A stretch of DNA of 64,000 nucleotides, taken from positions 953,573 to 1,017,572 of the forward strand of contig OZ316899.1 of NCBI GenBank assembly GCA_973895155.1, written 5' to 3'. The number at the start of each line of letters is the position of its first letter. The first letter of the stretch is position 1. Source of the DNA: Marsupella aquatica. Taxonomy: Eukaryota; Plantae; Marchantiophyta. The notes under the pieces were generated by a model. That model saw only the letters and a list, made by a program, of their open reading frames with translations. It did not search any database and was not told the DNA's origin. A program made the translations under genes and the position numbers. Shown here piece after piece: positions 487 to 24,262 of this stretch.

Positions 487-488
487 TA

Positions 489-3647: not shown

Positions 3648-6641
3648 TTAATTCCTTGCCGATGATCGATGGCGTTGTGGACCCCGTCGGCTCTGCCACA
3701 ACGCCTGCAGAAAATCCACTGTCCCTGCTACTGCTCCCCACTTAGCCGTTTCATCCAATTGGTCTACATCCTTAACTTCCTCCGGAATTGCAGCTAAAAA
3801 GGTGGATTCTATTGTAAAGCAGTCCTCGACCTCTTCGTCTTCTTCTTCCAAGTCACCTTCCATTGGTTCTTGCCATAATCCGCTGGGGGGTACCTCTGGT
3901 CCAAAGACACCTTCTTCGGTTAGGTTAGTGAAGCATTCTAACCAACGTACTTCATCGGCTGACTCCAGTCCACTATCGTACCCATCTACTTCCCTTATGC
4001 TTTTCCTACGGTCATCCTTAGTGTCCCAGGATACCGTGATAGAGGGGGTCCCGAAAGTGAACTGCTTTTTACCCCAATCTTCTATTACCTCGACTAGGTA
4101 CAGCCATGGCCTACCAATCAATAGCCGGAATGACGTAGGATTTACCGGCTTCATTACTACATAGTTAATGCTAAAGAAGATACCTCCTATCTCTGTCTTG
4201 ATGCCGGTTAACACTCCCGTCGGAATGACCTGATATCCATTGGCCATGTTCAACACTCTTCCAGTCATCTCCGGTGTTAGACCCCACCCTTTTGCTGTTG
4301 AATCAATCATAATACATACCCCTGATCCTCCATCGATGGGTACCCGTAGTAATAATTCTCCTTGAATCATTAATGGTAATGCTGGGGCTCCTTGATCTTC
4401 TTCTATCATTAGTACGTCGGATCTGGTTGCTACCTTGGGTAATCTCGGCTTGCCGAGAATAGCCTTCCTTAATTGCTTCCGGAAGTACGGGCTATTTTTC
4501 AATAGTTGACCTACTGTTGCCGAGACTCTAGATTCTAGTACATCTTTAGCCAGGTCATAGGGAACAATCGGCTTCTCCTCTGGTGGTGTTTCCGTCTTGG
4601 ATTCGGCCAGTTTTGCCACGCTAGTCTCCACAGCTGTTGGGTCTTCCGAAGCAAACAATGCTTTTGCTCGTTTTACATCCTTGGCAATGGCTTCGGTATT
4701 CTCCAGGGTTTCTAATTCTCTTAGTTGTTCCTTAACACTAGCCGTAACAGAGGGGTAGAACAACTTAGGATGATCTCGATTGAAGTCGCTATCTTGTGAA
4801 GGATTGGTTTCAATGGTGGGCTCATGGCTTACCTGTATTGCCGGAGCCCTCCCTTCTTCTTCTGTTGATGTTGACGAAGAGTCGATCCTTTCCTTCGTAA
4901 CCTTCCCTTTATTTTTGGCCAGCCCATCCCACCTTTCCTTCCTTCTGGTAGATCGAGTAGAGACCCGGTAGCAATCATGATCTAAATCCTCCTCTGAGAA
5001 GGTTGATAGGGCTTCGGCCTCATCATCAGATGGTACGAACTCTGCCTCGGCATCCTCTTGCCATCCTAGTTCGATGTGGTTGATTTGAACTCCTCCGGGG
5101 GTAGTACCTGGCGGTAAGATCTTGATCGGCAAAAGCTTATGATTTGCGGCCAGGCCTGCCAACCAAGTAGGACATTGCCCTAGCATATGACCTTCCTGTC
5201 GGCATCCCATACATAGCTGAGCTGGTTGTCCATCACCCTGTTTGCGTGCATTCGGGTATTCTCTAGCAAAATGGCCAGGTTGACCACAATTATAGCACGC
5301 CGCAAATCTTTGCACATTCGGCCTAGGAGGTACTGACGGGTTCTGAATAATCCGAGGATACATCTCTCCTGGATTGTTCCTTAACCCTGACCACAGAGAT
5401 GCAGGTCTGTTGGATAGGTCTCGTGCTCCAGTCTCACTGATGCCGAAAACACTATCAGCGGCATCTCCCAAAAAGTACTCTACTTCTCCCTGACATGGTC
5501 TGATCTCGGCCACATGCCGAACATGATTAGTATTAAGCTTAGGACAAGCATCTTTATGGTGTCCGGTTTTATAACATAAGGCACACCATACAGAGCTATC
5601 CTCCTGTACTACCTTCTTCTTTGGTTTTACCTCTGCAATGATAGCCTTAAGTTGCTCGGTAAGGGCTACGATGTTATCTGGTGGCTTAGCCTCCATCTTG
5701 ACTTTCGTCTTCCCTCTCCTTCTGCCCTTCCTTTTCCTAGTTTTTTCTTCTTCAGAACTAGAAGATGACTCACTCTTGCTACTCCCACTATTCGAGCTTG
5801 ACTTATCACTTCTAGACTTCTTGGAATGTTTCTTCTTCTTATCTTTTTTCTTATGGGGTGATCCCTCCTCTGATGAGGAACTCTCAGACTTAAGCTGTTT
5901 CTTCCGGCTTGTGATATCTGCATTAATGTATAATTGAATATCCTTAATTGCTTCGGCTAAGGTCTCCGGGTTCTCCTTCCTAATTGCAAAACTCATCTTC
6001 TGTGGCAAAGCATTCACCAACCATTGAAGTTGCATACCTTCAGATGCATTGGTCTTTGTACGTCTTACCAGTTTCTGAAAGCGTTGCAAGAACTTCCTGA
6101 AGGATTTGTTCTCCTTGAACCGAAGTTGTCCCAACTTCAGCACTGCTAGTTCTGAAGTTCCAATGGGTCGAAACTCCTTAACAAAGAGTGTTTTGAAGAT
6201 ATCCCAGATGGCTTGATCTTCCACATCTAATGCTCTGTACCAAGGCCTAGCCTCACCCTTGAACAGGCCGGGAAGAATCTGCATCTTGATGGCCGATTCT
6301 CCATTTGCTGCAGCGGTTCCCTCGAAATCATCCAACCATTCGTCCGGATCCTCATCTCCTCTCCCATGAAATGCCTTGTAATGTATGCGCGACCGCTGGC
6401 TCAATCTGGTCCCTGGCCTCTCGTCTGGCCGTGCCTCTGGTTCCCCCATGTCGGTTGGAGACTCACTTCTCCTTACCGACTCTTCTTCTGGTATGTCTTC
6501 TTCGACGCCACTTCCAGTTTCGGAGCTACCAGCTCTTTCTGCCCCTCTCAGTCGTTGTGTATCATGCCACCCGGCGAGCTGCTGCAGTCGAGCTCTCTCC
6601 CGTTGAATCACTCTTTCTTCCCTCGGCGTAAGGTCAGTCAT
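3648..6641 (-). CDS. gag: gag-protease polyprotein (997 aa) of A copy 1
   Basis: Retrotransposon gag core (FHGRGDEDPDEWLDDF), CX2CX4HX4C knuckles and an aspartic-protease-like motif VPIDGGSG...LLIGRPWL. Confidence 0.92.
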   Translation of the reverse strand: MTDLTPREERVIQRERARLQQLAGWHDTQRLRGAERAGSSETGSGVEEDIPEEESVRRSESPTDMGEPEARPDERPGTRLSQRSRIHYKAFHGRGDEDPDEWLDDFEGTAAANGESAIKMQILPGLFKGEARPWYRALDVEDQAIWDIFKTLFVKEFRPIGTSELAVLKLGQLRFKENKSFRKFLQRFQKLVRRTKTNASEGMQLQWLVNALPQKMSFAIRKENPETLAEAIKDIQLYINADITSRKKQLKSESSSSEEGSPHKKKDKKKKHSKKSRSDKSSSNSGSSKSESSSSSEEEKTRKRKGRRRGKTKVKMEAKPPDNIVALTEQLKAIIAEVKPKKKVVQEDSSVWCALCYKTGHHKDACPKLNTNHVRHVAEIRPCQGEVEYFLGDAADSVFGISETGARDLSNRPASLWSGLRNNPGEMYPRIIQNPSVPPRPNVQRFAACYNCGQPGHFAREYPNARKQGDGQPAQLCMGCRQEGHMLGQCPTWLAGLAANHKLLPIKILPPGTTPGGVQINHIELGWQEDAEAEFVPSDDEAEALSTFSEEDLDHDCYRVSTRSTRRKERWDGLAKNKGKVTKERIDSSSTSTEEEGRAPAIQVSHEPTIETNPSQDSDFNRDHPKLFYPSVTASVKEQLRELETLENTEAIAKDVKRAKALFASEDPTAVETSVAKLAESKTETPPEEKPIVPYDLAKDVLESRVSATVGQLLKNSPYFRKQLRKAILGKPRLPKVATRSDVLMIEEDQGAPALPLMIQGELLLRVPIDGGSGVCIMIDSTAKGWGLTPEMTGRVLNMANGYQVIPTGVLTGIKTEIGGIFFSINYVVMKPVNPTSFRLLIGRPWLYLVEVIEDWGKKQFTFGTPSITVSWDTKDDRRKSIREVDGYDSGLESADEVRWLECFTNLTEEGVFGPEVPPSGLWQEPMEGDLEEEDEEVEDCFTIESTFLAAIPEEVKDVDQLDETAKWGAVAGTVDFLQALWQSRRGPQRHRSSARN
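3658..3717 (-). promoter_or_regulatory. Candidate -1 ribosomal frameshift signal (slippery G GAU UUU plus stem-loop/pseudoknot)
   Basis: Heptamer GGATTTT at 3717-3711 is in the gag phase. It is followed by a 5-nt spacer and a perfect 10-bp stem GGCGTTGTGG/CCACAACGCC (3705-3696 with 3680-3671). It lies inside the gag/pol overlap, where pol is in the -1 frame. Confidence 0.8.
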
Positions 6642-6688
6642 TACCTACGCTTCCGTTCTAACTTCATATCTCACGGCTTAAGAAATGC

Positions 6689-6706
6689 CCCCTCCATCTA
6701 GCGCCA
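6689..6706 (-). other. Primer binding site of A copy 1, probably tRNA-Asn
   Basis: TGGCGCTAGATGGAGGGG, 4 nt (TTTT) after the LTR CA. 17/18 complementary to the plant cytosolic tRNA-Asn 3' end as I recall it (CCCCTCCTTCTAGCGCCA). Confidence 0.75.
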
Positions 6707-6710
6707 AAAA

Positions 6711-9700
6711 TGTGGTGCGTCCCATGGCTCCCTAAACCCAAGAAACCCCCCAGCTCAAGCCGATTCCCGCAGGTTTCGCGCTTGGCGAGGCCGTTTCCGC
6801 GGCTTAGCGGCATGGGACGCTGCTAACCTTCTACTACTACTATTAACATTTTACACACATATACTGGACAGATCCTTCATCGGGTCATGAGATACGTAGC
6901 CGGCCTAATATAGGCCTTCCCCTGTCTTCCCCTGTCTTCCCCTCCGTCTCGTTAGGTATGTTTGGATTCCGCCGCCGGAATGATCCCCAATAGGCTTGGT
7001 TAAGCCGCTAAGACCTCTCTCAGCTCGACACATCCAACTCTCACTCCCCTGCTTACTTTCCTTCGTTCTGTTGATGTGGGCACTCTTCACACAAGTTAAT
7101 GCGACACACAAATAGCAAAATGACTCATTCTGACTGAGTCATACCATGCACTTGCCATACAAACAGTACATCTCATACACAAGTTCTGCGAACTAAGCCG
7201 TGAGGCCAACTCTATTCAGCTCTTAGGCATGAGGAAACATGAATATACACAAGGGTCACTGTATGACTAACCGAGAGCTTCTCGTACTACTTGATCCCAG
7301 CCCGGCTGGTGCAAACTAAAAACTTGCTAAAGAAGAGGCCCTGAGCTCCCCGCTGCCCAGGTACTTATCCTGGTAGTGGATCCGCCATTCTTTGCATCGT
7401 AAGCCTAATCTACTTAACAGTAATCTACTTGCCCGAATCTACCTATGTACAGCAAGGCAGGAGCACAAGTGTTGCTCCTACCAGTGGGACCGCAATCCCA
7501 CTAAGCTAAGTGTCAGGGCCGCTCCTGGTTCTGATCCTAATCCTAAACGTGGAGATCCGTGCCCGCCCTGCCCACTCACGCCTCCTCCCTCCACGTCCGC
7601 CCTCCCTAAAAGGAACGGCGCCCTTGCACCGTCACGACACCGGTGGTGGATCCTCAATGGACGCCCCCAACACTTCCTCCGCAGCCACTGCCGTTGGCCC
7701 GCCTACTGACAGATTACCTGCCCTTGACCGAGTCAACTCTCCCTCGGCCTGACTGGGTCCACCTTCGGCTTCAGCCTCGACACCGGCCTCGGCAATACCC
7801 ACGGCTTCGGCCTCAGCCACTCTCACGGCTTCGGCTTCAGCCACTCCCTCGGCTTCGGCTTCCCCTTCCCCTAGGGTAGTTGGATCCTTAGCCGTGACCC
7901 TGTCTGGGGTCGGTGCTGGGTCTACCTCCTTGATCACCACGGCCTGTGAAGTCGTATTACTCCTTGACCCTGAAGGTTTCCGCTTCTTCTTCGTTGGTGG
8001 CTCGGCAGCTGGTCCCTTCCCCTTCCCACTTACCTCCGGCACTGGTGCAGGTGGCGCGGCTTGTCCTTCGGCAATTACCACCCCTGGTAACTGGTTTGTC
8101 CCAACAGGAGATGGACCTGCTGCAGCTAAGCATTTAAATACTGCGGCTTGTTTCTTCAGCCGCTCTGTTTGGTTGTCGGCCCGCCGCTGTAGGTTCTCCA
8201 TCTTCCTCGTGATTTCCTCCAACTCCTCTTGGGTTTCATCCAGGTCCTTACGTGCCCCCTCCAGCTCGTTTTTGGCCTCCTCCTGCTCCCTGTGGGCTTC
8301 CTCCAATTCCTTCTTCAAGGTAGCCTTCTCCTCCTGGGTTGCTCTTAGCTCCTTGTCGAGCTCTGCAATGATGACAGACTCCATCTGGTTCATCTTGGCG
8401 TAAGTCTGTTCGAGCATCTCGTCCTTCTCCCTTAGGTCGGCCTTGAAGCTGGCCGTCAGGGACGCAAGCTCCTGCTGCAGCGCCATAATCCCTTGATAGG
8501 ATTTCCCTAACTCGACCTCCTTCTGCTCAAGGGCTCCACGGATTTTCTCGAGCTCCCCTTTCAACGCCCATTCCTTTCTTTGGGTCTCCGCCATGGCCCG
8601 GCTGTTGGCTGTTATGTGGGCCTCCTCTGTATTCTTCAGCTCTTGCTTCCACTTTTCCCTTTCTTTGATCGTGTCGGCCAACTCTTCCTGCGTCTGAGTC
8701 AGTTTATCCTTGATATTCTGATTATCAGCCTGCGCGGCGTCCAACTGCCCCTGCATGATGTTCAGCTCATGTCGTTTAATCCGCAGTTCATCTTGGGCTT
8801 TCTTGGCCGCCCTTAGATCTTCAATCTCGGCTTCCATCCTCCTAAGCCGCCGAATGACCTCGTCCTTCTTGCTTCTCTCTAAAGCCACCGCTTCTTCTAA
8901 TTGGTGCTTCTCCAACTGCTCCCTATGGAAAAAGGGTCCTACCTCCAACTCCTCTCCAAAGATGCCGAGCGCAAGTTCCCCACACATCTCACCATACTCC
9001 ATGGCTCTATTCTTAGCGTAGGTGGAGTAAGTAGAAGTGATCGGCATCGCCCATCGTGGCCTCTGCTCCCAAGCCGTCCTGCGGATCTCTTCAATCGTGG
9101 CTAGAGGTTTGCTTCCTTTTTCGGCTAGCCGCCTGATGTCCTCCGGCCAATCTCCTCCTGGTAAATCCTTTTCCTTAGCCAGGGCGGCCTCTTCCTCCTG
9201 CTTGATTCGCTCCTGAAATTCCTGCACCGTCTGTTTTATGCCGTCGAAGCTCGGGGGAGCAACATCTGGTGGGGGAGACTCAGGGCTACTCTGCTGGTTG
9301 GGGTCCCCTCGCACTACCCTTGGAAGTGTGGGGACAAACCGGCCACAGGTCCTTACTCCTGGAACGTGATGGTCCGACCCATAGCCGGAATTATCATGGC
9401 TGCAGTCCTCCACTGCCTCCTCTACCTCTTGGATTTCCGGCTTCTCCCTCTCCTCTTCCTCGGTAGGAGCTTCGGGCAATTCTGCCTCAGATTCGGAGCT
9501 TGAGGTTCCCACGTACATTCGAACACCTGGCTTGGATTCCGGCCTGATTCTCTCGTCTCCAGCAAAGGGGTTTTCTCTTGTGAGCCGGTGTAGGCCTACC
9601 TCTGTAGTAGTGTCCTGCATGGTTGCCGTTGCCGTTGTTGTTGCCGATGCCGATTTCTTTTCTTTCTCCAGTAGTTTCAGCAGACTCTGCATGCCTGGTT

Positions 9701-11367
9701 GCTGCATCGGCAAGTCTTCCTTCCTGGGCCTAAACACCTGCTCGATCGTAGGACTAACAGGTGGTTGAGGCTTCTCAGCCAACGGCCTCGGCGTTGGAGC
9801 TTCCTCGGGTGCCCTTACCTGCAGGGGAAGTACCGGGGCAAAAGTCTGACCTCTGGCATACCGGCACAACAGCGGCATGTGATAGCCAAGCCGCGACACG
9901 CTCCCCATGCCGATTACCTGCTGCTCCTCCTTTAAGATCTTCTTCAATTGGTTGAGGAGGTACCCGTTGTAGTCCCGGCTTGGGTCTGGCCTTTCTGCCA
10001 GATAGACCTGTGCCTTGCCGATCTCTGCCCTCGGCAAGTTACAATGCATGGTCACCCGCAAGAAGTCGATCATCTCTCCTATGTGCGGGTTGGTGCAGGT
10101 GTTCCGGAAGAAGCCATTCTTCGTTGATGGCCCGGGGAACGACCGGAACTCCTTGTCAGGCAAGGTCTTCCTGGTATCAACTTTGGTCTTATTGCCCATC
10201 GGCAAGCCAAACACTTCGGCAATCACCTTGGGAGTAAGATAGAAATCCTTCCCATATATCCTCGTGCAATTGGTCTCGGGTTCCCATGACCCCACGAATT
10301 CTAATAGGTCTGACTCCGGTACCTCCGGCTTCAGCCATGGTAATCTTACAAAGGCCTCCAAGCCGGATCCGGCCATGAAGCCTTGGTACTTCTTGGTCTG
10401 CATGGCCGTAAAGCATGCATCCTCCTCCCGTGCAAAATGTAGTTGCACCTCCACCGGTAGGGTTGCCGCCCAGCCCTTCCAGGTGTCATCCCTGGTTGGA
10501 ATGGCCTTGATGGGATCGACCTCCTCCTCTTCGGCTTCTCCCTGCCTCCTGCTCTGCTGCTCGGCTGGCTTCTTTGGTGCCGTCGACCTCGTTCTTTTTG
10601 CCGGGGTGGCTTCATCGTTGACGGCTCCCTTCCTCTTCATCTCTGCTGCCGTGGAGGTTTCTCCTAGCACCGTTGCCTGGGTCCACCTTTCCGTGCTACC
10701 CTTTAATTCCCAGTGTATGTCGTTGCAGTTCTTGATGGCCTCTCGGATGCCGACGACGCTGTCCTTGCAAAACAGAAGATCGTCGAGTTGATTGGAAGTA
10801 GGCGTCCACAGGAACTCGTCCTTGATGAGTTCGCCTCCTAAGAAAGCCGTCTTCTGCAGCTCCCACAATCGAGCGAGCTCCTGCCGTTCTCGAGCTGCCC
10901 TTTCTGACTCCTCGTCCTCGTAAGTCTTGATGTACTCAGTTGCCCGTTCGAACAGGCATCCCCAGAAATGTGCCGCTTGATTGACGTTGCTCATACCCTC
11001 CTTAGGTTGATCGTCGGTATCTACTCTCTCCCCGAGTGCTTGCCTAAGCAGCTGACAGTAGTTGGCCTCCCGTAGTCGTCTGCCTAGTTCGTGCTCGCAA
11101 ATGAGCCACCATCTCCTGCAAGCGCTCCTTACCCCTCTCCTCTGCCGGTCCTTCTTCCCGTTAATCCTTCCTAGCCGCCGACGCTTAACGCGCCATAACC
11201 CTAATCGGGTTTTCACCCTCAGCCTTACCTCCGGCCTCTGCCCGGGTTCCATGGTTGCCCCTAATTGTTTATATTTTCCTTGTTTTGTCACTATACTAAG
11301 GTGTTCCTAGGGTGCCTTCCTGCTTTACCCACTTAACCGGCCGAGTGATTCCTGTCTAGGCATCACA
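6711..11367 (-). repeat. 5' LTR of A copy 1, 4657 bp
   Basis: TG...CA termini (TGTGATGCC...GCACCACA), adjacent to the PBS. Same length and termini as both LTRs of copy 2. Confidence 0.95.
7632..11252 (-). CDS. LTR-encoded accessory protein, 1206 aa from the first ATG (basic N-terminus, conserved globular domain, long coiled coil, Ala/Glu-rich tail)
   Basis: Uninterrupted ORF entirely inside the LTR; ATG in strong context ACCATGG. The track start at 11291 is GTG. Homologous reading frames are kept in the diverged LTRs at 17220-18322 and 62565-63687. Confidence 0.88.
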   Translation of the reverse strand: MEPGQRPEVRLRVKTRLGLWRVKRRRLGRINGKKDRQRRGVRSACRRWWLICEHELGRRLREANYCQLLRQALGERVDTDDQPKEGMSNVNQAAHFWGCLFERATEYIKTYEDEESERAARERQELARLWELQKTAFLGGELIKDEFLWTPTSNQLDDLLFCKDSVVGIREAIKNCNDIHWELKGSTERWTQATVLGETSTAAEMKRKGAVNDEATPAKRTRSTAPKKPAEQQSRRQGEAEEEEVDPIKAIPTRDDTWKGWAATLPVEVQLHFAREEDACFTAMQTKKYQGFMAGSGLEAFVRLPWLKPEVPESDLLEFVGSWEPETNCTRIYGKDFYLTPKVIAEVFGLPMGNKTKVDTRKTLPDKEFRSFPGPSTKNGFFRNTCTNPHIGEMIDFLRVTMHCNLPRAEIGKAQVYLAERPDPSRDYNGYLLNQLKKILKEEQQVIGMGSVSRLGYHMPLLCRYARGQTFAPVLPLQVRAPEEAPTPRPLAEKPQPPVSPTIEQVFRPRKEDLPMQQPGMQSLLKLLEKEKKSASATTTATATMQDTTTEVGLHRLTRENPFAGDERIRPESKPGVRMYVGTSSSESEAELPEAPTEEEEREKPEIQEVEEAVEDCSHDNSGYGSDHHVPGVRTCGRFVPTLPRVVRGDPNQQSSPESPPPDVAPPSFDGIKQTVQEFQERIKQEEEAALAKEKDLPGGDWPEDIRRLAEKGSKPLATIEEIRRTAWEQRPRWAMPITSTYSTYAKNRAMEYGEMCGELALGIFGEELEVGPFFHREQLEKHQLEEAVALERSKKDEVIRRLRRMEAEIEDLRAAKKAQDELRIKRHELNIMQGQLDAAQADNQNIKDKLTQTQEELADTIKEREKWKQELKNTEEAHITANSRAMAETQRKEWALKGELEKIRGALEQKEVELGKSYQGIMALQQELASLTASFKADLREKDEMLEQTYAKMNQMESVIIAELDKELRATQEEKATLKKELEEAHREQEEAKNELEGARKDLDETQEELEEITRKMENLQRRADNQTERLKKQAAVFKCLAAAGPSPVGTNQLPGVVIAEGQAAPPAPVPEVSGKGKGPAAEPPTKKKRKPSGSRSNTTSQAVVIKEVDPAPTPDRVTAKDPTTLGEGEAEAEGVAEAEAVRVAEAEAVGIAEAGVEAEAEGGPSQAEGELTRSRAGNLSVGGPTAVAAEEVLGASIEDPPPVS

Positions 11368-11785
11368 GGTTAGGTTTTTGTATGGTGTTTGCTAGGTAGG
11401 TTATTTTGCAATGCACTATGCACAGTGTGAGACCGTGCATCCAAAAGGTATGATGCCCCATCCATTTATTCCTTGATCCTTTAGGCTATTTCAGGTTTGG
11501 CATGCAAGTTTTTATCATATGTGCTTGAGCTTGTTTTCGGCAATTGTAGATCATGCATGCTCATTATGAAAATGTCCACCTTGTAGAGATTCTGGATATC
11601 CCCACACTTTGTGTGTAGAGAATACGGCCTAGTAGGCACGGCAGAGCGCGGGTATCATTGAGGTATAGCAAGTGTTGTATATATGTCTCTCATTCAATTG
11701 TTTTTCTAGACATAAATATTTGTCTTGCTGGTTTTTTTCTTTCATCCAACATATTGTCATGGTTGTATGATATATATGCAGATCG

Positions 11786-13090
11786 ATGTCTGCTTCTGAT
11801 AGTTCCACGTCGGATTCAGACTCAGACACGAGCTCGTCTGAGGAGGAGGTTCCTCCACCCCCTCCTCCAGACCAACCTCGTGCTTGGCCACTAGGGTCCA
11901 TACCTTGTTGGTGTGTGAGATGTAAGGGACTTGTGGTTCGACATGCCTGGTAGACTTGTGAGCACATCGAGAACTATGGTCACCACGAGGGTGATACACC
12001 AGGGTATTTGCCTAGCCAGGTAATAAATACGTCCCTCCTTCATTCCATGAAATTCCAATAATTAGTCCACAAATGCTAAATTACTTTACATCTAAACAAC
12101 AATTCATGTATTGATTTGTGTCAAATCATTGTTTGTTGAAATAGGTGCCTCGTAGACCCCCACCTCCTCTGGTTGATAATGCTATGTGGTTGGAAGGGTT
12201 TCTAGCAAGGGCTCGTGAGTTGCTTGCATCTGCCCTTGCCCATCCACCTCTTAGTCCCCCTGCTCCTATCCCCACACATGTGCATGTAGACGAGGATGCA
12301 CCGGTCTCTCGACCCGAGGAAATGGATACTAGGGTCCTACGTACACGTTCACGGTCTCGCAGACGTAGACGACAATATGAACCGGTGGAGGAGGTAGAGC
12401 ATCGGGAGGAGGCGTTACGTAGTGATCGACCACCCGGAAATGGAGATTATATTTGTGTTGAGGGCCGGTTTGGACTATCTTATCTCACTGGTAGGGCTGC
12501 TGATGTTTGGAAGGACTTTTCTCCTAGTCTCTTCAAATTTCCAGATTTCATTCATACTGATGAACCAGTTGACATATGGGGGTCGGCCTTGGATAGTGAA
12601 GGCATCCTCTATTGGTGCTGATATAGGATATGGTCTATATGCTTTGGAGGACATTGTGGTCCCTCCAAAGCCATGGAGATGTGGATATGATGGAGAGCAC
12701 CTTTTCCCTTACATTGGGGCTGTATATAATGCAAAGAGTTGGAAGACTTTGTTGCGTCAGCATCCAAGCTGGGGGGTGTACGCCTTGAGGATGGACTCAG
12801 ACCCAGATGAGGTTTTGACTAGGCCGTGGCATTGTAGGATGATTGATGGTGACCCTATTTGGAATGGTAATTTAGCAGGGTACATCAATAGTACAACGGG
12901 TAGAGGTAGAGATTTTGAGGCTAATGTAGAGTGGATCCAAATTTTTGGCCCTCCTAGAGATTCATATTTTGTGAAACATATGGATGACCATATCATGACA
13001 GTAGCCATTAGGACTATTAGAGCCGGTGAGGAGATATTGTGTGAGTATGAGTGGGACGCCCCAAAATTGTCCCTACGTTGCGGTCCATGA
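11786..13090 (+). pseudogene. Two-exon SET-domain (lysine methyltransferase-like) gene inside CACTA-1: exon 1 11786..12019, exon 2 12145..13090
   Basis: Exon 1 is MSASDSSTSDSDS...CWCVRC...H..YGH with a TAG at 11951. An AT-rich GT-AG intron 12020..12144 joins in frame. There is a frameshift near 12568. SET motifs: VKASSIG..GYGLYA, PYIG, NLAGYINS, ANVEW, AIRTIRAGEEILCEY. Confidence 0.8.
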
Positions 13091-13151
13091 TAGTATGTTG
13101 GACTTACATGCATGTAAATCTTACATTGAATTAATGAGATTCATGATGATT

Positions 13152-13170
13152 TATATATATATATATATAT
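13152..13170. repeat. (TA)n microsatellite in the putative intron 13093..13224
   Basis: TATATATATATATATATAT read directly from the sequence. Confidence 0.9.
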
Positions 13171-13224
13171 TGATGATTGTAATGAGATTAATGTTAATGA
13201 GATTGCATTGATGTTGTATGATAG

Positions 13225-16200
13225 AACCAATATGTACAATCTGATATTGGGGTCATATCACGAGCTATGCGACAACACATTGTTGAGGCCATGGTGGCCA
13301 ACCATGGGCATGATGAAGGGATGCAGGAGGATGATGTACAACATGAGGGTGATAATCCTACTCAAGCACATCTGGATGAGGAGAGGGCCATGGATGAGCT
13401 CATGGACCAATTTTATGATGATGATGTTGATATTGGTATGGAGGATATGGGTACAACTGATGACAACACCACTCATCCAGGACCTTCTAGGGGGGGACAA
13501 AACAAGGATTGGGAGGAGGCTCAACGTCATGCTCGTACTCGCATATTTGAGGGTAGCACCTTATCTCGGCTCTCCGCAATAATGTTGTTGCTGAATGTGC
13601 AGCAAAGACATGGGGCCAGCAACCTACTTTTGGATGATGTTTTGCGTACCTTGCATGATCGTATTTTGCCACCAGGCAATACCATGCCAGCCTCTTGGAA
13701 GGAGGCAAAACAAGTGTTGAAGTCCATTGGCCTCAAGTATGTAGTGATACATGCATGTGTGAATGATTGCATTATTTTTAGGGGGGAGCATGAGAATGCA
13801 ACTGCATGTCCTAAGTGTGAGAAGCCTCGTTACCGTGATGACATGTTGACAGGGAAGGTGCCTCAAAAGGTTATGCGATACTTTCCTCTCATCCCCCGAT
13901 TGCGACATCAGTACCGTTGTGCAGAGTTAGCTGAGTACATGGTATGGCACTCAAAGAATCGTTCTGATATGGCTACGAACTCTAGTGCCATGCGGATGAT
14001 GGTTGACCCTCCTACCAATCAATTTGTTGAGGGCAGATGGGGGGAGTTCAGCACTAAACCACAACATGTTCGACTTGGCTTGGCAGCTGATGGTATCAGC
14101 CCTTTTGCATTGGCGGGTAAAGCAAAACCATATTCAGTATGGCCAGTAGTTTTGACTAACTACAATATCCCTCCATGGATGGCCATGAAGAAAGGTCATT
14201 TACTGCTCTCCATGATCATCCCGGGTCCTAAGCAAGTAAAAAAGATTGACATCTACTTGCAACCATTGATTGATGAGCTTTTGCAATTGTGGAGAGGAGT
14301 GGATTGTTATGACGGACGTCGCAATACAGGAGGTGTACCTCGCGCGTTTACCCTCAAGGCCATCCTTATGTGGACCATGCATGACCTACCAGGTATGACC
14401 TGATAAACCTTGGCTTATTTCCTTGATGTACTACCTTAAATTTAGTGTGCATTAACCTTATTTCATAATTGGCTGGTTGTATATGGGCTTGGTACAGGGT
14501 TTGGGTATATCTCTGGATTGCAAACATCAGGCTATCGAGCTTGCCCTTCATGCGGACCGGATTTGGAGGGAGTGGCAAGACGCAAGTCAAGTACTTTGCG
14601 TAAGATAGTTTACATTGGTCATACCAAATATCTTCCAGCAGACCATCCTTGGAGGAGTGATCATTTCTTGTATGACACTGATGAGGGCCAACCTGATACT
14701 TGTCCTCAACCTCAGTGAAAGGATCCAACATATTGGAGAGAGGTATGGGAGAGAGTTCAAGACCCCGATGATCCATTACAGTTTCTCCAATGTGGCATGA
14801 CCCGTTTATCTGCATTGTCACAGTTGCCATATTGGTCAGAGATGCCCATTAATCACTTGTTGGATGCAATGCACATTGAGGGAAATGTGGGGAGATCATT
14901 GATTCGTCATCTATATGGGGAGAAGAACCACAACTGGAGAGAAAGTTGTGAGGAGATGGGGATGCATGGTCTTTTGGGTTTTTGGCCATCTTTGGACCCC
15001 CCTGGTGATCCCCCTAGCATCCATCCTCCTTGGGTTTTGACCAGGGCAGAGCGCATAGAGTTTCGCAGACGGATTGGGTCAATGAGGTTTCCCACAGGTT
15101 ATGGTGCCAATCTTCGTAAGGCATTTGGGGGGGATGATTCTCCAAAATGGCCATCGTACCTGAAAACACATGATTATCATCGGTTACTAGAACATGTCAT
15201 TCCAGTTGCGATTATTGGATTGGGTAGTGAGGAACTTCGTGATGCTCTTTGGTCATTGGGCAAGTTTTTGAGATGGGTATGTCAGAAGGAGGTACCAGAG
15301 GATGACATTGCTGCGATGGAGATATTTGGAGTAGAGGTTGTTTGCAAGTTGGAGAAGGCACTTCCACCCTCATTCTTTGATGGTCAGGTTCATTTCCTCA
15401 TACATTTAGTGCGTGAGGTAGCAATTGCAGGCCCGGTACATTGTCGATGGATGTATTGGGTAGAGCGTTACATGGGGGTGATGAAGTCATATGTCTCTAA
15501 TCGGGCTAGGGTGGAAGGTAGCATTGCAGAGCGTCATCTTGGAGCAGAGAGTATGTTTTATTGTACAAACATAGTTGCCACACTAGATCCAAGGGCACCT
15601 AGGGGATGGATAGATGAGGCGGCACGAGAGGTAGACTATGAGGATGATAGACTCACTGGGGCATCAGGAGAGCGTGGCTTAGGCTCAGTAGAGCGTTTGC
15701 AACTTACAACATTTATGTTGTATAACTCACCAGAGGTTGTAGGGGAGTGGACGACATTTTATGAGGAGGAGAAGCAAAATAGTTGACGGCCACGGTTGTT
15801 TCCCAAGTTTCACCCATACATGAAATCAAAGTTGTTAGAAGTGGATGCCTTGGTGGGTACCGGAGATAGTATATTACATTACCCACAAGTGACTGATAAG
15901 CTTCGTACCTTAGTTCATGGTCCACTGCTTAAAGTCACGACTCGGACGGCACTGTGGTCAAAGGGGAGACATTTCCGTGTGGAACGACTTGATGAGAAGA
16001 GAGCAGCTACACAAGATTGTGGGGTGATGGGTTGGTTCACCCAGGATTCCCAGAGTAGCACGTCGGACATGAACCCCATTCGCTCCACCGTGGCCCATTA
16101 TGGGAAGATTGATGAGATCCTGACAGTGAAATACCATGCACATACTACTTTGGAGGAGGTGGTATTTAAGTGCAAATGGTTCAAGATGAATCTTGTAGGC

Positions 16201-16466
16201 AACAATCAAACATGTGAAGATGATGCGTGCGGATTTACCCGTTTGAAGACATCTGCAAATAGTGTCATTAGTTCCAATTGGAGGTCCTCAGATCCCTTTG
16301 CCTTCCCACATCACCTTGAGCAGTGCTTTTACCTACCCTATCCAGATGACCCACATTGGTCCATTGTCATGCCTTATATCCTAGATCACGGTCTATAGTC
16401 CAAAAGAGACCCAATGTCGTTGTAGTGGAAGACAACGACATCCCCGACCCTCCACAAGCTAGTTAG
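13225..16466 (+). pseudogene. CACTA TnpD/Tnp2-type transposase with an intron (14393..14497), in-frame TGA at 14716 and 15784, and a probable frameshift near 16380
   Basis: Motifs HACVNDC, CPKC, RYFPLIPRL, LAADGISPF, WPVVLTNYNIPPW, YLQPLIDEL. Splicing restores HDLPG|FGYISG. Later motifs SFFDGQVHFLIHL, RWMYWVER, FKCKWF, DPFAFP. The ORFs at 14518, 14797 and 15796 share one frame. Confidence 0.9.
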
Positions 16467-16719
16467 TATATTTTGTATGTAGCTAGGCCCCCCCAACCAC
16501 ACCACCTTCATGTTTTTTGTAATCGACAATATAAAAGTTGGCATCATTACTTCTTTAATTGTCATGGTATGCACGTGCCCTAAATCTCTTGGTTATATAT
16601 AGAAGTGTCCTTACTTTATATACCCTTCCTAAGAACCCCCCGCCTTATGTCCCATTGACCGTCCCATGAAAAAGCCATTGGATTTCCATCGCACCTTCTA
16701 AAAACAGAAACCAGACTTT

Positions 16720-17216
16720 CCGATACTCCCAACTAAGGACTATTCCATACAAAACCCATCAGACACACATTTCTGATCCTCTCCACAATGGACACCTTCT
16801 CCTCCTTTGTTGACGAGGTATCCGATCCAACATCCAACGGACAATCTCCGACATAACTTTTTACGCACAAAATATCCGACCCTAAACCCAATGGACACAA
16901 ATATCCGATGCATTCCGTGACGGTCCCAGTCCGATACAACTACCAACGCAAACATCTTGCGATGCATTAAGGTTCGAACGCATTATGCAGTCATGGCGAC
17001 ATAGTTTCCGATATGTTTAGCATCGGAGACTGTCCGATAGTAGTACGATGGGACAGCGTATGCGATGGGTTTTACATCGGAATTGGCAGGTCCGATGGGA
17101 TCAGGATCGGAAAATACGTTGCGGGGCACATCAGATATTGTCCGAAGTGTTCGACATGGGATGGGTGACGTTTGGCTCAAAAGGAGTATCGGAAAACCGC
17201 CAAAAATGTACTAGTG
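16720..17216. repeat. CACTA-1 subterminal repeat region and right TIR
   Basis: More than ten TCCGA/TCGGA motifs in both orientations, ending in TAGTG. Confidence 0.85.
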
Positions 17217-17219
17217 CTT

Positions 17220-19220
17220 AGTCTGATAATCAGATTATCAAGGATAAACTGTCTCGGACCCAAGGGGAGTTGGCCAACGCGGTCAAGAAAATAGAGAAGT
17301 GGAAGCGGGAGCTAAGAGACGCAGAGGAGGCCCACATAGCAACCAACAATTGGGCCATGGCGGAGACCCAAAGGAAGGAGAGGGCGTTGAAGGGGGAGCT
17401 CAAGGATCTCCGCGGAGCCCTTGAGCAGAAGGAGGCCAAGTTAGGGAAATCCTATCAAGGGATTATTGTGATGCAGTAGGAGCTTGCATCCCTAACGGCC
17501 AGCTTCAAGGCCAACCTGCCTGAGAAAGATGACCAGCTCGATCAAACTTACGCCAAGACAAACCAGATGGAGTTTGAGGTCGTAACGGAGTTTGACAAGG
17601 AGTTGAGAGCAATCCAGGAGGAGAGGGCTACCTTGCGGAAGGAATTGGAGGAAGCCCAAAAGGAGTTGGAGGAGGCGTGCAAGGACCTGGACAAAACGCA
17701 GGTGGAGTTGGAGGAAATCACAAGGAAGATGGAGAACTTACAGTGGCGGGCCGACAACCAAACAGAGCGGCTGAAGAAACAAGTTGCAGTATTTAAGTGC
17801 TTGGCTTCATCTTTTCAAACTCCAATTGTGGCAACCAAGTTGCCAAGGGTAGTACTGGCCAAAGGACAAGCCGCAACACTTGCACCGGTGCCGGAGGTAA
17901 GTGGCAAGGGGAAGGGACCAGCTGCCGAACCAGGGAAGAAGAAGAAGCGGAAATTTTCAAGGTCAGGGAGTAACGCGGCTTCTCAAGCCATCATGACCAA
18001 GGAGGAGAACCCGACACCAACCTCAGGTAGGGTCACGGCAGAGGATCCAACTGTCCTAGAAGGCGGGGATGGCAAGGCCGAAGCCGGGACAATCAGTGAT
18101 GAAGCCAGTGTACCAGATTCACCACTAGAGCAGGTTGGGGAGGCCGTAGCCGTATTGGAGGCCATGGCCGATGCTGAGGCCAAAGCCGAGGGTGGACCCA
18201 ATCAGGCCGCAACAGAGTTGACTGGGTCCGGGGCAGGTAATGTGTCAGAGGACGGGCCTATAGCAGTGGTTGCGGAGGAAGCGTTGGGGGCGTCTATTGA
18301 GGATCAATCACCGCTACCATGACGGTGGAGGAGGGCCGCTCCTTTTAAGGAGGGCGGACGTGGAGAGAGGAGGCATGAGTGGGCAGGGCAGGCTCAGATC
18401 TCCAAGTTTAGAATTAGGATCAGGACCAAGAGGCGGCCCTGACACTTAGATTAGTGGGATTGCGGATCCACTGGTAAGAGCAACACTTGTGCTCCTGCCT
18501 CGCTGTACATAGATAGATTACAGTTAGGATAGATTAGGCTTATACTGCAAGGAATTAGGCGGATCTATTGCCATGATAAGTACCTGGGCAACGGGGAGTT
18601 CAGGGCCTTCTTCTTTAGCAAGTTCTTAGTGCACCAGTTGGGCTGGGTCAAGTAGTAAAAGAAGCTCTTGGTTAGTTATACAGTGACCCTTGTGTATATT
18701 CATGTTTCCTCATGCCTAAGAGATGAATAGAGTTGGCCTCACAACTTAGTTTGCAGATCTTGTGTATGAGAAGTACTGTTTGTATGGCAAGTGCATGGTA
18801 TAACTCAGTCAAAAGGAGTCATTTTGCTATTTGTGTGTTGCATTAACTTGTTTGAAGATTGCCCACATCAACCAAGAGAGAAGGAAGTAAGCAAGGTAGT
18901 AAGAGTTGGATGTGTTGAGCTCAGAGAGGTCTTAGCGGCTAACCCAAGCCAGTTGGGGATCATTCCGGCGGCAGAATCCAAACATACCTAAAGGAGGACC
19001 AGGAGAGGAAGACAAGGGAAGGCATAGAAGAGGCCGGCTACGTATCTCATGACCCAATGAAGGAGCTGTCCAATATATGTGTGTAAAATGTTAGTAGAAG
19101 AGAGTTAGCAGCGTCCCATGCCGCTAAGCCGCGGAACTGGCTTTGCCAAGAGTGAAACCTGCAGGAATCGGCTTGTGTAGGGGGGTTTCTTGGGTTTAGG
19201 GAGCCATGGGACGCACCACA
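17220..19220 (+). repeat. 3' part of a diverged family-A LTR (solo or 3' LTR) interrupted by CACTA-1; contains the C-terminal part of the LTR ORF (to 18322, TAG at 17477-17479)
   Basis: Collinear with the A LTR coiled-coil and tail coding region and the non-coding end. Ends GAGCCATGGGACGCACCACA like family A. Followed by GTACC, with no PBS. Confidence 0.88.
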
Positions 19221-21170: not shown

Positions 21171-24100
21171 GAATGTCCGGTTGCAAACCCAGATCACTCC
21201 TACAGAATCAAGCGCCCACGCCAAACTAACATGGCGAATAAACAGGAAGCATATGTGGAGAGGATCCAATCAACAAGAAGAGATCCACAATAACTCTCCA
21301 CATCAATAGTGATCATACATCAATCAAACAATGTTCAATGTAGGGCCTTCATAATAGGCCTCTCAATGTTCAATGTCGTGGCTACAAATCCATGCACAAT
21401 TGGTTCAATTCATGCATCTAGATGGATTCAGAAGCATCAAAAACCCTAAGATAGCTTACAATTTGGCCCAAAATGGCAATCTAAACAAACCAGAATGTGT
21501 ATAAAATGCCTAAGTGCTCATTCCATTAACATCAAAGTGGGAAGAAGTGTGTGTACACAAGAGCACTTAAGAACCACATAATTAAGCGTGTGGGGGAGGA
21601 ATAGCTTTGGGATGGGTGGCCTCTCACTTGTAGTTATGCACCAAATTGACCGCTCCAAAATTAGCAGCTTGCAACTACTCCTCACATACCAGCCCGCTCG
21701 CTCCGCTCCACCCTCACGTCCCGAGTTACCACGAGTTGCCTCGATGAGCCCTTCACACCCGCAACGCTTTGCTACGCCAGAACCAAGTTCAGATTTTGCA
21801 ACATTCAGACTTCCGCCCCCTATTTCCCTTTGCAGAAATGCATGGTAGCGGCGTGGCAGAGTACAGTCCGTTGCAACAGCAATCCACCTTGTATCCGCAG
21901 ATGCTGCCACTGCATTGACATACTGTCTTCATAAAAATGCAGATCTGCAGCGAGCGTCGGTTGAAAACTTGCAACATTCGAGTCTCAATCCCTCAGTTTC
22001 CTTCAAAGAAACACGTTGCAAAATGAAAATCGACTTTGCGTCAACCAACAAGTTAGCCAAGCACAAAATCAGCAACATATGCAACTGCTGACAGTCGCTT
22101 TGTTCACACCAAACGCTGTTTGTACAAATCATCATACGGAAGAACTAGACAACAATACGGCTGCGCCTCGCAAATCTGCATACGGACGAACTAGATAGCA
22201 ATACGGCCGCGCACTCGCAGACCTGCAATCGATGGCACCATCAAAATGTTGTTTCCTTCAAAAAAAATAGCCACCGCTTCACAAGATAGAACGCTGTTGC
22301 ACCTGATCTGGCTACAGCCAACCGATACAACTCAAACACGTCGATCTGCAACCAAGGAACACAGTCGCGGAACTCGACTACCTTAACACTTAGCTCCGGC
22401 GTCGCTGACTCTGACGCCGAGCTCCCTTATGGTCCAGGCCCGGATAGGCCATCCGGGTAGGACTTAGCATGGGGAGACTTGTGGGCAATGAGACGTGGCA
22501 CTGGCGAGGCAAGGGGCCAAGCTGGGGACACACACTAAGGACTTGGACTAGCCTATGGCTGGCCGGGTCAAGGGGAAATGGGCCAGGCTCAAGGATGGCC
22601 GTCCGGACCGTCGGATGGACTTTGAGTTCTGAGGGCTTGGGAGTGAGCTCCTCTTGGGACCAAGGCCAATAGAGTTGACGCCATTGGCAATGGACGCTTG
22701 GGGTGCAAGTTGTGGCCCGATCCGGGTTGGGCCGATCGGGGGCCCCGAGCAGCGATCAGACCTGAGGGCCTAGGCATGAGCACTGGGTCGGCCCGGTCAC
22801 AACGGGCTAAGGCACTCCGCTTGCGGATGCCTATCAAGAAAGTTATGGGCGTTGCCAGTTGGTGGCGCACCCATTATGCGCGATGGGATCCGGGTTTGGG
22901 GCCAAATGTTTAGGGACCAAAGCTGGTCTGAGGGTGGCAAGTCTCCAGAAGCATATATGAGGAGAGTGGTGTCTCATTGGGGGCTAAGGCCGAGCCAAAG
23001 TCGTGAGCCGCGGCGGTCGCGACACTAAGGGGAACCGCCAAACGGAAATGGCGATATCTTCCCAACGGGAAGTCCGTTGGAGGACTTCTTGGGTGCGTTG
23101 GAAAGCTCTTGAGGAGGGCTACGTCCTTCTGAGCTCATCTGGGTCTGGGGATGCCGTGGGTTCTCATAGTTTGCGGGTGTTAGCTCGCCCGCTTGCCAAA
23201 TCTTGCCGAACAGCAGCCAAGCCGCGTTCAGTCTCCCAAGGGAGCTTGTGTTGGGGAGGCAAGGCCAAGTAGGTGTGGAGGATGAGTTCCAAGGGTGATT
23301 GGCCCCTAGACCACCAGTGGGGCAAACCAGGAGTGGGTGCTAGAGTCGGGGCCGTTCTGGTCCCGACGTGTTGGGACAAGCTTAGGACAAGCTTTGGGAC
23401 AAACTATGCTAGTTGGGCCATGAGCATGTCCTGAGGTCAGGGCGGTCAGTTGGTGATGGATAGGTACGAGGGGGAACCCGGGCCGCGCCCAAGGAAGGAG
23501 CTATCTTGGACGGACAGTGGACGTGGGTTCTGGTTCCGGCTTATGGCATCGGGAGGACCTATCGCTGACCTATTTACCAACGTCTGTTGAGCTTGAGTTA
23601 GGATGCTAGACTGGGCGAGTTCTAGATCCGGAGGGGTTACTTATCGAGGTGCTTGGTTGCTTGTGCAAACAGTGAGGACCATTGAGTAGCGGTCGTGTAG
23701 GTGGCAAGTGCGGCTTCGTATGGGAGTGGCCGCAGGTGGTGTTAGAGGCACTTGGATGCTTGCTCGAGGTATTCCGTGGAGGCGTCTGGGCACCAAGGGC
23801 ACTTAGGCGCAAGTGCTGGGATTGGTGAGGGCGCTGGGTGGCGAGGTCCACCACTAACACAAACGATCTGCACACTATTGATAGATTTGTGCATATTGGC
23901 TACAGATCCGCCAAACCTCCAACTCTAGATCCGCTCAAGAATCAAACTCACACAATCTCAACTTGGATCCACATGTTGGAAATCCAATCAAACAATACAA
24001 TGCACGATCCGAGATACCACAAACCGTCGCCGAACACAATCAAACTGAAAATCAAAGCTCTGTCCAACAACAGCAGAGTCCGATGCCTGATCTTTCAATG

Positions 24101-24262
24101 TAACCTCAATAGAATCTGAACAATGATCAACGCCAACAATACGCACTCAATCCCGTCCAATCCGATCACACACATATGTCGAGCCAATGCACCTTGCACT
24201 CAAGGAATCCATGCTACATAGAGAGAGCTCTCAGCCACCATAGCCACCACACAAGCTCCCCT

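What the first reader, a model, noticed from the sequence alone, without database searches (positions are those of the whole stretch)
12020..13225. SET exon looks like a cassette exon: one first exon could make either the SET protein or the transposase
Seen: exon 1 ends in a phase-0 donor (CAG|GTAATA, 12020). The SET exon starts at a phase-0 acceptor (ATAG|GTG, 12145) and has a GTATGT donor at 13093, two bases after its stop. The transposase frame is open from another phase-0 acceptor (ATAG|AAC, 13225). Exon 1's CxCxxC...H..YG motif resembles the transposase-associated domain normally found at the TnpD N-terminus. Established: maize En/Spm makes TnpA and TnpD by alternative splicing. Inference: inclusion gives Zn-motif-SET and skipping gives Zn-motif-TnpD, so the SET gene is built into the element's expression circuit rather than being a passenger.
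Basis: inference. Interest (0 to 1): 0.8.

Follow-up and report, generated by a model that had tools for sequence, protein, structure and literature searches.

The report
SET gene nested in transposase intron
A liverwort CACTA transposon family carries a SET methyltransferase exon inside the intron that splits its transposase's start/zinc-motif exon from the rest of the transposase, so one start exon can probably make either protein; the copy in this window is broken and no RNA data could be obtained.

Summary
It has an in-frame TAG in the zinc exon (11951), an extra G that shifts the SET frame (12578-82) and two TGA codons in the transposase (14716, 15784). All four differ from the family majority. 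Its 5' end is cut off by an LTR retrotransposon at 11367/8.

Seven sampled relatives with usable sequence upstream of the SET exon (SET 47-75% identical; among them Calypogeia fissa) share one gene plan:
- an ATG/zinc exon with a phase-0 donor (one of the seven, L006, is ambiguous);
- a SET exon that opens exactly at a phase-0 acceptor and has no ATG at that start;
- a transposase exon that opens at a phase-0 acceptor, with a conserved peptide upstream of a first ATG whose position varies.

A relative without SET joins the zinc exon to the transposase exon across a 75-nt intron. So SET sits inside the ancestral transposase intron.

The zinc motif matches Transpos_assoc N-termini by profile comparison (95.5%) but falls below Pfam's threshold. 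The donor after the SET stop is not conserved, so an alternative acceptor or alternative last exon fits as well as a cassette exon.

No spliced read was seen; the four runs laid look like DNA. Other first readers noted further SET-CACTA copies in this genome. Verdict: partly supported; a new variant of known kinds.

The parts
11368..17216 (+). CACTA (En/Spm-type) element fragment. The 5' terminal part is missing, cut by the LTR retrotransposon whose LTR ends at 11367.
   Evidence: The 3' TIR is found only once in the window. LTR copies lie at 6711-11367, 24263-28919 and 35144-39800. TnpD domains are present.
11420..11447 (+). Putative 5' leader mini-exon a, ending AAAAG|GTATGA. The start is approximate.
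   Evidence: Related motif plus GT donor in L007 and L008. Inference; no RNA evidence.
11619..11662 (+). Putative 5' leader mini-exon b, with conserved motif CCTAGTAGGCACGG...ATCATTGAG|GTATAG. The start is approximate.
   Evidence: Same motif followed by a GT donor in L003, L004, L006, L007 and L008.
11782..12019 (+). ATG/zinc-motif exon. Acceptor CAG| at 11781, ATG at 11786, motif CWCVRCKG-x11-EHIENYG, phase-0 donor CAG|GTAATA. This copy has an in-frame TAG at 11951-53.
   Evidence: The laid contigs of the family have G at 11951.
12020..12144 (+). Intron of 125 nt between the zinc exon and the SET exon.
   Evidence: GT..AG with phase 0 on both sides in six of seven lineages, 99-132 nt long. 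Contigs of family members stop aligning inside it (joint 12023->12128). L001 and Riccia have no intron here and show the joined reading frame.
12145..13090 (+). SET exon (946 nt here; a multiple of 3 in all relatives). Stop TGA at 13088-90. A fifth G in the run 12578-82 shifts the frame in this copy.
13091..13224 (+). AT-rich spacer with a (TA)n run at about 13152-13171. The spacer ends in the transposase acceptor ATAG|.
   Evidence: The donor position is not conserved in relatives. Family contigs stop aligning at 13106-09 and resume at 13191-13204.
13225..14392 (+). First transposase (TnpD) coding exon. It opens at the acceptor with NQYVQSDIGVISRA before the first ATG (13267) and ends HDLPG|GTATGA (phase 1).
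14393..14497 (+). Transposase intron (GT..AG).
   Evidence: The spliced reading HDLPGFGYISG...ACPSCG matches single-ORF relatives such as P0117. Family contigs break here.
14498..16398 (+). Second transposase exon (rest of Transposase_21, DUF4218, DUF4216). In-frame TGA at 14716-18 and 15784-86. Stop TAG at 16396-98.
   Evidence: The family has C at 14716 and 15784, giving CGA.
16399..17216 (+). 3' subterminal region, with 11 of the window's 25 TCCGAT motifs, and the terminal inverted repeat (17197-17216, reverse complement CACTAGTACATTTTTGGCGG).

Best explanation
The window holds a dead, 5'-truncated copy of a liverwort CACTA family whose intact members encode two proteins from one transcription unit.

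After one or two non-coding leader exons comes an exon that carries the ATG and a short zinc motif, a reduced Transpos_assoc module. Its phase-0 donor can pair with either of two phase-0 acceptors.
- The near acceptor opens a SET-domain exon and gives a protein of roughly 330-400 aa: zinc motif plus SET.
- The far acceptor, about 1.1-1.2 kb downstream, opens the transposase and gives a zinc-motif TnpD of about 1,100 aa with the usual TnpD layout.

So the SET exon lies inside what was the ordinary short intron between the zinc exon and the transposase body.

Shown here: the conserved sites, phases and open frames; selection on SET; and the intron in a relative without SET. Inferred: that both splices happen in vivo, and that the SET protein is a working lysine methyltransferase, perhaps carried to the element's own chromatin by the shared zinc module.

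Unresolved: how the SET mRNA ends. It could use a second donor (a true cassette), keep the spacer, or be polyadenylated in the spacer.
For: Gene plan across seven lineages (window, L002, L003 = Calypogeia fissa, L004, L006, L007, L008):
- The ATG exon length is a multiple of 3.
- The donor is NAG|GTA-like.
- The SET frame opens exactly at AATAG|G or CAG|G, with no ATG at that start.
- The transposase frame opens at YAG|.

Zinc-to-SET join: L001 (P0010) and Riccia (P0016) have zinc motif and SET in one continuous frame that equals the predicted spliced product.

Zinc-to-transposase join:
- The transposase exon starts with a conserved peptide, [ND][QE]FVxP[DN]..V..R, that lies 1-45 codons upstream of a first ATG whose position varies. 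L002 lacks the ATG of window 13267.
- Those pre-ATG codons show pS 0.48-0.77 against pN 0.16-0.19.
- The relative without SET, L015, has an ATG/zinc exon (GAG|GTACTT), a 75-nt intron, then TAG|GAA opening the transposase 27 codons before its first ATG.
- The zinc exon profile matches Transpos_assoc-bearing TnpD N-termini: hhalign 95.5%, E 1.5e-8.
- The spliced product would place the zinc motif at about residue 41 and the HAC motif at about residue 252. Single-ORF TnpDs have 41 and 250-251.

SET as part of the element:
- SET dN/dS is 0.16-0.35.
- Pairwise SET and TnpD identities correlate at r = 0.91.
- The GxG motif, an invariant Asn and the C-terminal Tyr motif are kept, and the model has a SET fold.

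Family state: the family majority is intact at all four defects of this copy.

Precedent: alternative splicing of one CACTA gene into two proteins is reported for maize En/Spm and Arabidopsis EN/SPM3 and EN/SPM7 (PMC13547354).
Against: - No RNA evidence. The four runs that hold the sequence cover introns and subterminal DNA and gave no GT..AG joint. No RNA run was listed.
- No database protein joins the zinc motif directly to this family's transposase exon.
- L004 has an ATG two codons upstream of the transposase acceptor and L006 has one at codon 2, so those transposases could start on their own.
- L006 lacks a clean phase-0 GT after the zinc exon.
- In L001 and Riccia the zinc-SET intron is absent, so the transposase would need an internal donor. 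Phase-0 GTs exist there (GGA|GTACCA, GAG|GTACAG), but a Val codon in that span is expected by chance.
- The lineages share ancestry, so the conserved sites are not independent trials.
- dS is saturated (1.1-1.9), so the dN/dS values are rough.
Confidence: 0.6

Rival explanations
1. Only the SET protein uses the zinc exon. The transposase is made without it, starting at its own internal ATG (13267 in this copy). Its transcript would either begin in the SET-transposase spacer or splice a non-coding leader exon straight to the transposase exon.
For: An in-frame ATG lies within 2-46 codons of the acceptor in every lineage. It is 2 codons upstream of the acceptor in L004 and at codon 2 in L006. Conserved non-coding leader exons exist that could be spliced directly. 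No zinc-transposase protein of this family is in the databases.
Against: The peptide upstream of the variable first ATG is conserved, with mostly synonymous change. The transposase would lack the N-terminal module that other TnpDs carry. The relative without SET has no sensible reading other than zinc exon spliced to transposase.
Confidence: 0.2
2. Strict cassette exon. The SET exon is always flanked by used splice sites (acceptor 12145, donor 13093). The inclusion isoform therefore carries the SET stop followed by the spliced transposase exons.
For: GTATGT lies 2 nt after the stop here. GTATGT lies 13 nt after the stop in L008, and some GT lies within 30 nt of the stop in the other lineages.
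Against: The position and quality of that GT are not conserved: GTAGAT at +17 in L002, GTGCCC at +27 in L004, GTCCTC overlapping the stop in L003. Such an mRNA would have a stop far upstream of later exon junctions, which in plants usually triggers mRNA decay (general knowledge). Three conserved sites are enough for an alternative-acceptor model.
Confidence: 0.12
3. Zinc-SET-transposase fusion protein, made by a donor inside the end of the SET exon or by reading through the stop.
For: Riccia model P0035 runs from SET into Transposase_21. L003 has an in-frame GTT|GTGAGG three codons before its stop.
Against: A stop codon follows the catalytic Tyr motif within 2-12 codons in the seven junction-table lineages and L001, and after 13 in Riccia P0016. 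An in-frame donor before the stop is not conserved; none is seen in the window or L002. P0035 is an automatic model built on a degraded copy.
Confidence: 0.03
4. There is no working circuit. The SET piece is a decaying captured host-gene fragment, and the splice-like sites are chance.
For: This copy is full of stops and frameshifts.
Against: The defects are private to this copy. The SET frames are intact and under purifying selection in relatives down to about 47% identity. The acceptor sits exactly at the opening of the frame in every lineage that has the intron.
Confidence: 0.05

Closest known systems
Maize En/Spm and Arabidopsis EN/SPM3 and EN/SPM7 (CACTA elements that make TnpA and TnpD from one gene by alternative splicing; PMC13547354)
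   Same: CACTA termini, subterminal repeats and a TnpD-type transposase (Transposase_21, DUF4218, DUF4216). One transcription unit appears to give two proteins through splice choice after a shared 5' part.
   Different: The second protein here is a SET-domain protein upstream of the transposase body, not a TnpA. No TnpA-like frame exists: the element ends 818 nt after the transposase stop. The shared part here is coding and carries the transposase's zinc module. No RNA data exist for this family.
DNA transposons that carry SET genes: HarbingerS, Phytophthora MuDR, some Helitrons, and red-alga Plavaka PAG2 (PMC12730594; bioRxiv 10.1101/2025.02.11.637652)
   Same: A SET-domain gene is kept as an accessory gene of a cut-and-paste or related DNA transposon. 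Plavaka belongs to the wider EnSpm/CACTA group.
   Different: The passages read do not report a coding exon or splice donor shared between SET and the transposase. PAG2 also has a DNA methylase domain. This family is in land plants (liverworts), and its SET has only weak, generic sequence similarity to solved SET domains.
Transpos_assoc (PF13963), the N-terminal domain of plant TnpD proteins
   Same: Same C-x-C-x2-C-K-G, 11 residues, E-H-[IL]-x2-[YF]-G pattern and spacing. Profile-profile match of 95.5% over 33 columns.
   Different: Only the central core is present. The N-terminal helix and the C-terminal Y..W..HGE part are missing. Pfam scores are 14 bits against a cut-off of 27.7.
SETMAR (primate SET fused to a mariner transposase)
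   Same: A SET domain and a transposase are linked in one gene through splicing.
   Different: SETMAR is a host gene that captured a transposase and makes a fusion protein. Here the element carries SET, and a conserved stop keeps the two proteins separate.

Membership tests
CACTA / En-Spm superfamily | Terminal inverted repeats beginning CACTA | tested here: inconclusive
   The 3' end reads CACTAGTACATTTTTGGCGG on the reverse strand at 17197-17216. The 5' end is not in the window; the element is cut at 11368.
CACTA / En-Spm superfamily | TnpD-type transposase (Transposase_21 with DUF4218 and DUF4216) | tested here: met
   PF02992 at E 2.9e-37, PF13960 at E 1.9e-30, PF13952 at E 3.9e-07. Closest named relative is a Calypogeia fissa protein at 71% identity.
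CACTA / En-Spm superfamily | Subterminal short repeats | tested here: met
   11 of the window's 25 TCCGAT sites lie in 16719-17193.
CACTA / En-Spm superfamily | 3-bp target site duplication | not testable with these tools
   The 5' end of the element lies outside the window.
En/Spm-type two-protein alternative splicing | Two mRNA isoforms from one promoter, shown by RNA | not testable with these tools
   The four laid runs behave like DNA and gave no GT..AG joints. No RNA run was listed.
En/Spm-type two-protein alternative splicing | One upstream exon compatible in frame with two downstream alternatives | tested here: met
   A phase-0 donor and two phase-0 acceptors in six of seven lineages; L006 is ambiguous.
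En/Spm-type two-protein alternative splicing | The second product is TnpA | tested here: not met
   There is no further open frame after the transposase. The second product is a SET protein.
Cassette exon | Conserved acceptor upstream AND conserved donor downstream of the exon | tested here: not met
   The acceptor is conserved. The donor after the stop varies in position and sequence.
SET domain (PF00856) | Match above Pfam's gathering score | tested here: met
   27.8 bits for window 12584-13087 and 30.0 bits for P0001, against a cut-off of 22.4. Best fold matches are LegAS4, MLL1, NSD1 and SETD8.
SET domain (PF00856) | Catalytic motifs (GxG, NHS-type Asn, ELxxxY Tyr) | tested here: inconclusive
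   GxG and the final Tyr are invariant and align with the EZH2 motifs. The family has an invariant 'NS' where, from motif order and my own knowledge, the NHS motif should lie. Activity was not tested.
Transpos_assoc (PF13963) | Match above Pfam's gathering score | tested here: not met
   Best E-value 0.025. L002 scores 14.1 bits (E 0.055) against a cut-off of 27.7. Three of nine exon-1 peptides match. The window's pieces gave no hit.
Transpos_assoc (PF13963) | Homology to the N-terminal module of PF13963-bearing TnpD proteins | tested here: met
   hhalign probability 95.5%, E 1.5e-8, 33 columns. L015's zinc exon against the same profile: 90.5%.

The most novel reading that the evidence does not exclude
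In liverwort CACTA elements, which lack TnpA, the accessory protein is a SET lysine methyltransferase that borrows the transposase's own N-terminal zinc module through a shared exon. The enzyme would then be delivered to the element's own ends or chromatin. The choice between two acceptors would set the balance between writing a chromatin mark on the element and cutting it out. That would make it a self-targeted chromatin writer wired into transposase expression.
Probability: 0.25. Interest if true: 0.8.

Novelty: new variant of a known kind. Interest (0 to 1): 0.6.

Why it matters
Transposons that carry chromatin enzymes are rare. They are a direct window on the conflict between mobile DNA and host silencing.

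Here the accessory enzyme is not a neighbouring gene. It sits inside the transposase's first coding intron and depends on the transposase's start codon and zinc module. This gives a clear, testable case of how a transposon can add a second protein without a second promoter.

It also suggests what takes the place of TnpA in early-diverging land plants, since TnpA-like domains are reported only from flowering plants (PMC13547354). Intact family members in Calypogeia fissa and in the other sampled contigs make RNA and enzyme tests practical.

Tried and rejected
- RNA evidence. They cover introns and subterminal DNA like genomic runs. Every 'joint' lies at non-GT..AG ends with unknown letters between, so each is a divergent intron or spacer, not a splice. 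A second run search restricted to RNA libraries listed nothing.
- Pfam on the window's exon-1 pieces found no PF13963. The same held for P0010 and P0016.
- Looking for a database protein that joins the zinc motif to this family's transposase found none among 120 listed relatives.
- Assigning the SET domain to a subfamily failed. Sequence search of solved structures gave only E >= 0.02, and the fold search gave generic SET hits, so no substrate can be named.
- Riccia gene models were not used as evidence for splicing. The first-exon donor of model P0016 is phase 1 and does not fit the transposase acceptor, and the copy is degraded.
- The region before the second LTR copy (23500-24262) is not the missing 5' end of the CACTA.
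- My L007 SET coordinates were out of frame; those rows should be ignored. They were corrected.
- SET-transposase fusion and chance-site readings were rejected (see rivals).
Full report
WHAT IS IN THE WINDOW

The stretch belongs to a CACTA (En/Spm-type) DNA transposon fragment spanning 11368-17216 on the + strand.
- Its 3' end carries a terminal inverted repeat (reverse complement CACTAGTACATTTTTGGCGG, 17197-17216) that occurs only once in the window.
- A subterminal region holds 11 of the window's 25 TCCGAT motifs.
- The 5' end is missing. At 11367/11368 the element abuts the end of a 4.66-kb LTR of a large retrotransposon, whose LTR copies lie at 6711-11367, 24263-28919 and 35144-39800.
- Pfam finds Transposase_21, DUF4218 and DUF4216 in the downstream frames and a SET domain in 12584-13087.
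- The closest named transposase relative is from the leafy liverwort Calypogeia fissa at 71% identity. SET relatives include Riccia sorocarpa proteins. The host is therefore most likely a liverwort.

CHECKING THE OBSERVATION

- The zinc exon has an in-frame TAG at 11951-53.
- The frame entered at 12145 stops at 12619-21, and the SET domain is in the +1 frame.
- The transposase has in-frame TGA codons at 14716 and 15784.

Contigs of four public runs were laid on 11368-17216. The family majority has G at 11951 (GAG), one G fewer in the run 12578-82, and C at 14716 and 15784 (CGA). So these four defects are absent from most family copies, and the family consensus is open throughout.

Those runs cover introns and subterminal DNA and look like genomic DNA. 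Every 'joint' has non-GT..AG ends with unknown letters between. These joints mark introns and spacers too diverged to align, not splices. They do fall in the predicted introns (12023->12128, 13106/09->13191/204, 14395/97->14495/96). That fits exons being conserved and introns being free to change. No RNA run was listed, so no junction could be tested directly.

COMPARATIVE TEST

Contigs encoding relatives were fetched:
- L002, a metagenome contig;
- L003, a C. fissa chromosome;
- L004/L005 and L007-L011, assemblies of public runs;
- L006, L013 and L014;
- L001, and Riccia L012.

Every one that reaches far enough has, on one strand, a small ATG/zinc exon, a SET frame and the transposase. The junction table for seven lineages (SET 47-75% identical to the window's) shows the following.
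1. The ATG exon is always a multiple of 3 in length (204-237 nt) and ends NAG|GTA-like in six of seven. L006 is ambiguous.
2. An intron of 99-132 nt follows.
3. The SET frame opens exactly at AATAG|G (CAG|G in L007), in phase 0, with no ATG at that start. The in-frame stop directly before it is the acceptor's own TAG in six of the seven; in L007 the frame is open further upstream. The exon length is a multiple of 3 everywhere except in the window (946 nt).
4. A stop follows the catalytic Tyr motif within 2-12 codons (13 in Riccia P0016).
5. After 134-237 nt of AT-rich spacer, the transposase frame opens at YAG| in phase 0.

Zinc-to-SET splicing is close to certain. The SET frame cannot start on its own. 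In L001 (P0010) and Riccia (P0016) the intron is absent, and zinc motif and SET form one continuous frame equal to the predicted spliced product.

IS THE TRANSPOSASE ALSO FED BY THE ZINC EXON?

Four lines of evidence say probably yes.
1. The transposase exon begins with a conserved peptide ([ND][QE]FVxP[DN]..V..R.) within 0-2 codons of the acceptor. The first ATG lies at codon 2, 15, 15, 15, 23, 25 or 46, depending on lineage. L002 has ATA where the window has ATG 13267.
2. In the 14 codons before that ATG, window, L002 and L003 differ mostly at synonymous sites (pS 0.48-0.77, pN 0.16-0.19). Sequence upstream of the acceptor is only 55-58% alignable.
3. The zinc exon is a reduced Transpos_assoc module.
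   - Its profile matches the N-termini of PF13963-bearing TnpDs with 95.5% probability (E 1.5e-8, 33 columns) and the same C-x-C-x2-C-K-G / EH[IL]xx[YF]G spacing.
   - Pfam itself gives only sub-threshold hits (best E 0.025).
   - Joining the exons would place the zinc motif at about residue 41 and the HAC motif at about residue 252. Single-ORF TnpDs such as P0127 and P0131 have 41 and 250-251.
4. L015 is a relative without SET whose transposase is 42% identical. It has an ATG/zinc exon ending GAG|GTACTT, a 75-nt intron, and TAG|GAA opening the transposase frame 27 codons before its first ATG. Its zinc exon matches the SET family's profile at 90.5%.

The simplest reading is that SET was inserted into this ancestral intron and that both of the intron's splice sites were kept.

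IS SET A PASSENGER?

No.
- dN/dS between lineages is 0.16-0.21 for the catalytic half and 0.31-0.35 for the N-terminal half. dS is saturated, so these values are rough.
- Pairwise SET and transposase identities correlate at r = 0.91 over 21 non-independent pairs, consistent with a single acquisition followed by co-divergence.
- The whole homologue set is small: 78 representatives with E <= 0.001 among 1.84 billion.
- The GxG motif, an Asn (in an invariant 'NS' where NHS is expected) and the C-terminal ELxxxY Tyr are invariant.
- The predicted structure (mean pLDDT 68.9) matches SET folds generically: LegAS4, MLL1, NSD1, SETD8. No substrate can be named.

WHAT IS NOT SUPPORTED

- The donor after the SET stop is not conserved. 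It reads GTATGT at +2 in the window, GTATGT at +13 in L008, GTAGAT at +17 in L002, GTGCCC at +27 in L004, and GTCCTC overlapping the stop in L003. Three conserved sites are enough for a model in which one donor chooses between two acceptors. Whether the SET mRNA then keeps the spacer, ends in it, or splices onward is open.
In all lineages a YAG| acceptor lies 0-4 nt before the ATG, at distances that are not multiples of 3, so the sequence upstream is non-coding. Conserved leader mini-exons with GT donors lie upstream (window about 11619-11662 and about 11420-11447).
- A SET-transposase fusion is unlikely because the stop is conserved.

COMPARISON WITH WHAT IS KNOWN

- One CACTA gene giving two proteins by alternative splicing is established for maize En/Spm and reported for Arabidopsis EN/SPM3 and EN/SPM7. 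The same paper reports TnpA-like domains only in flowering plants (PMC13547354).
- SET genes carried by DNA transposons are known in HarbingerS, Phytophthora MuDR, Helitrons and red-alga Plavaka (PMC12730594; bioRxiv 10.1101/2025.02.11.637652).
- Four full-text searches found no description of a land-plant CACTA with a SET exon nested in the transposase intron and sharing its start/zinc exon. The library is incomplete, so this is not proof of novelty.

VERDICT

It is a new variant of known kinds. Confidence in the two-acceptor model is about 0.6. The main rival, that the transposase starts at its own ATG without the zinc exon, stands at about 0.2.

Noticed in passing
window 1-11367 and 28434-39800: Two copies of a ~15.5-kb Athila-like LTR retrotransposon (4657-bp LTRs, ~6.2-kb interior) are about 100% identical over their whole length and lie 28,433 bp apart. 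This suggests a very recent segmental duplication, two sister insertions, or an assembly duplication.
   Followed up: partly
window 17217-19220: Directly after the CACTA 3' end lies an inverted, older (81-93% identical) fragment of the same LTR family, covering LTR positions about 1-2020. The CACTA may have inserted into an old LTR copy.
   Followed up: no
window 11420-11447 and 11619-11662; L003, L004, L006, L007, L008 upstream of their ATG exons: Conserved short leader exons share the motif CCTA(T/G)(T)AGGCA...GAGCCCGG.ATC followed by a GT donor. The motif occurs twice in several elements. It may be both a 5' UTR exon and a protein-binding site.
   Followed up: partly
window 14716 and 15784: Both private nonsense changes in the transposase are CGA->TGA, meaning C->T at CpG. 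This is the pattern expected from decay of methylated DNA.
   Followed up: partly
L001 codons 111 and 119 of P0010; L012 codon 104 of P0016: In the two lineages where zinc motif and SET form one exon, phase-0 GT sites (GGA|GTACCA, CCG|GTTGAG, GAG|GTACAG) lie where the other lineages have the zinc-exon donor. The SET region there could act as a retained intron of the transposase gene. A Val codon in that span is also likely by chance.
   Followed up: partly
window 52350-55056: Tandem array of about 705-876-bp units (64-95% identical), unrelated to the finding.
   Followed up: no
window 13152-13171: A (TA)n microsatellite lies in the SET-transposase spacer. The read-laying tool skipped 13141-13180 as a repeat.
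   Followed up: no
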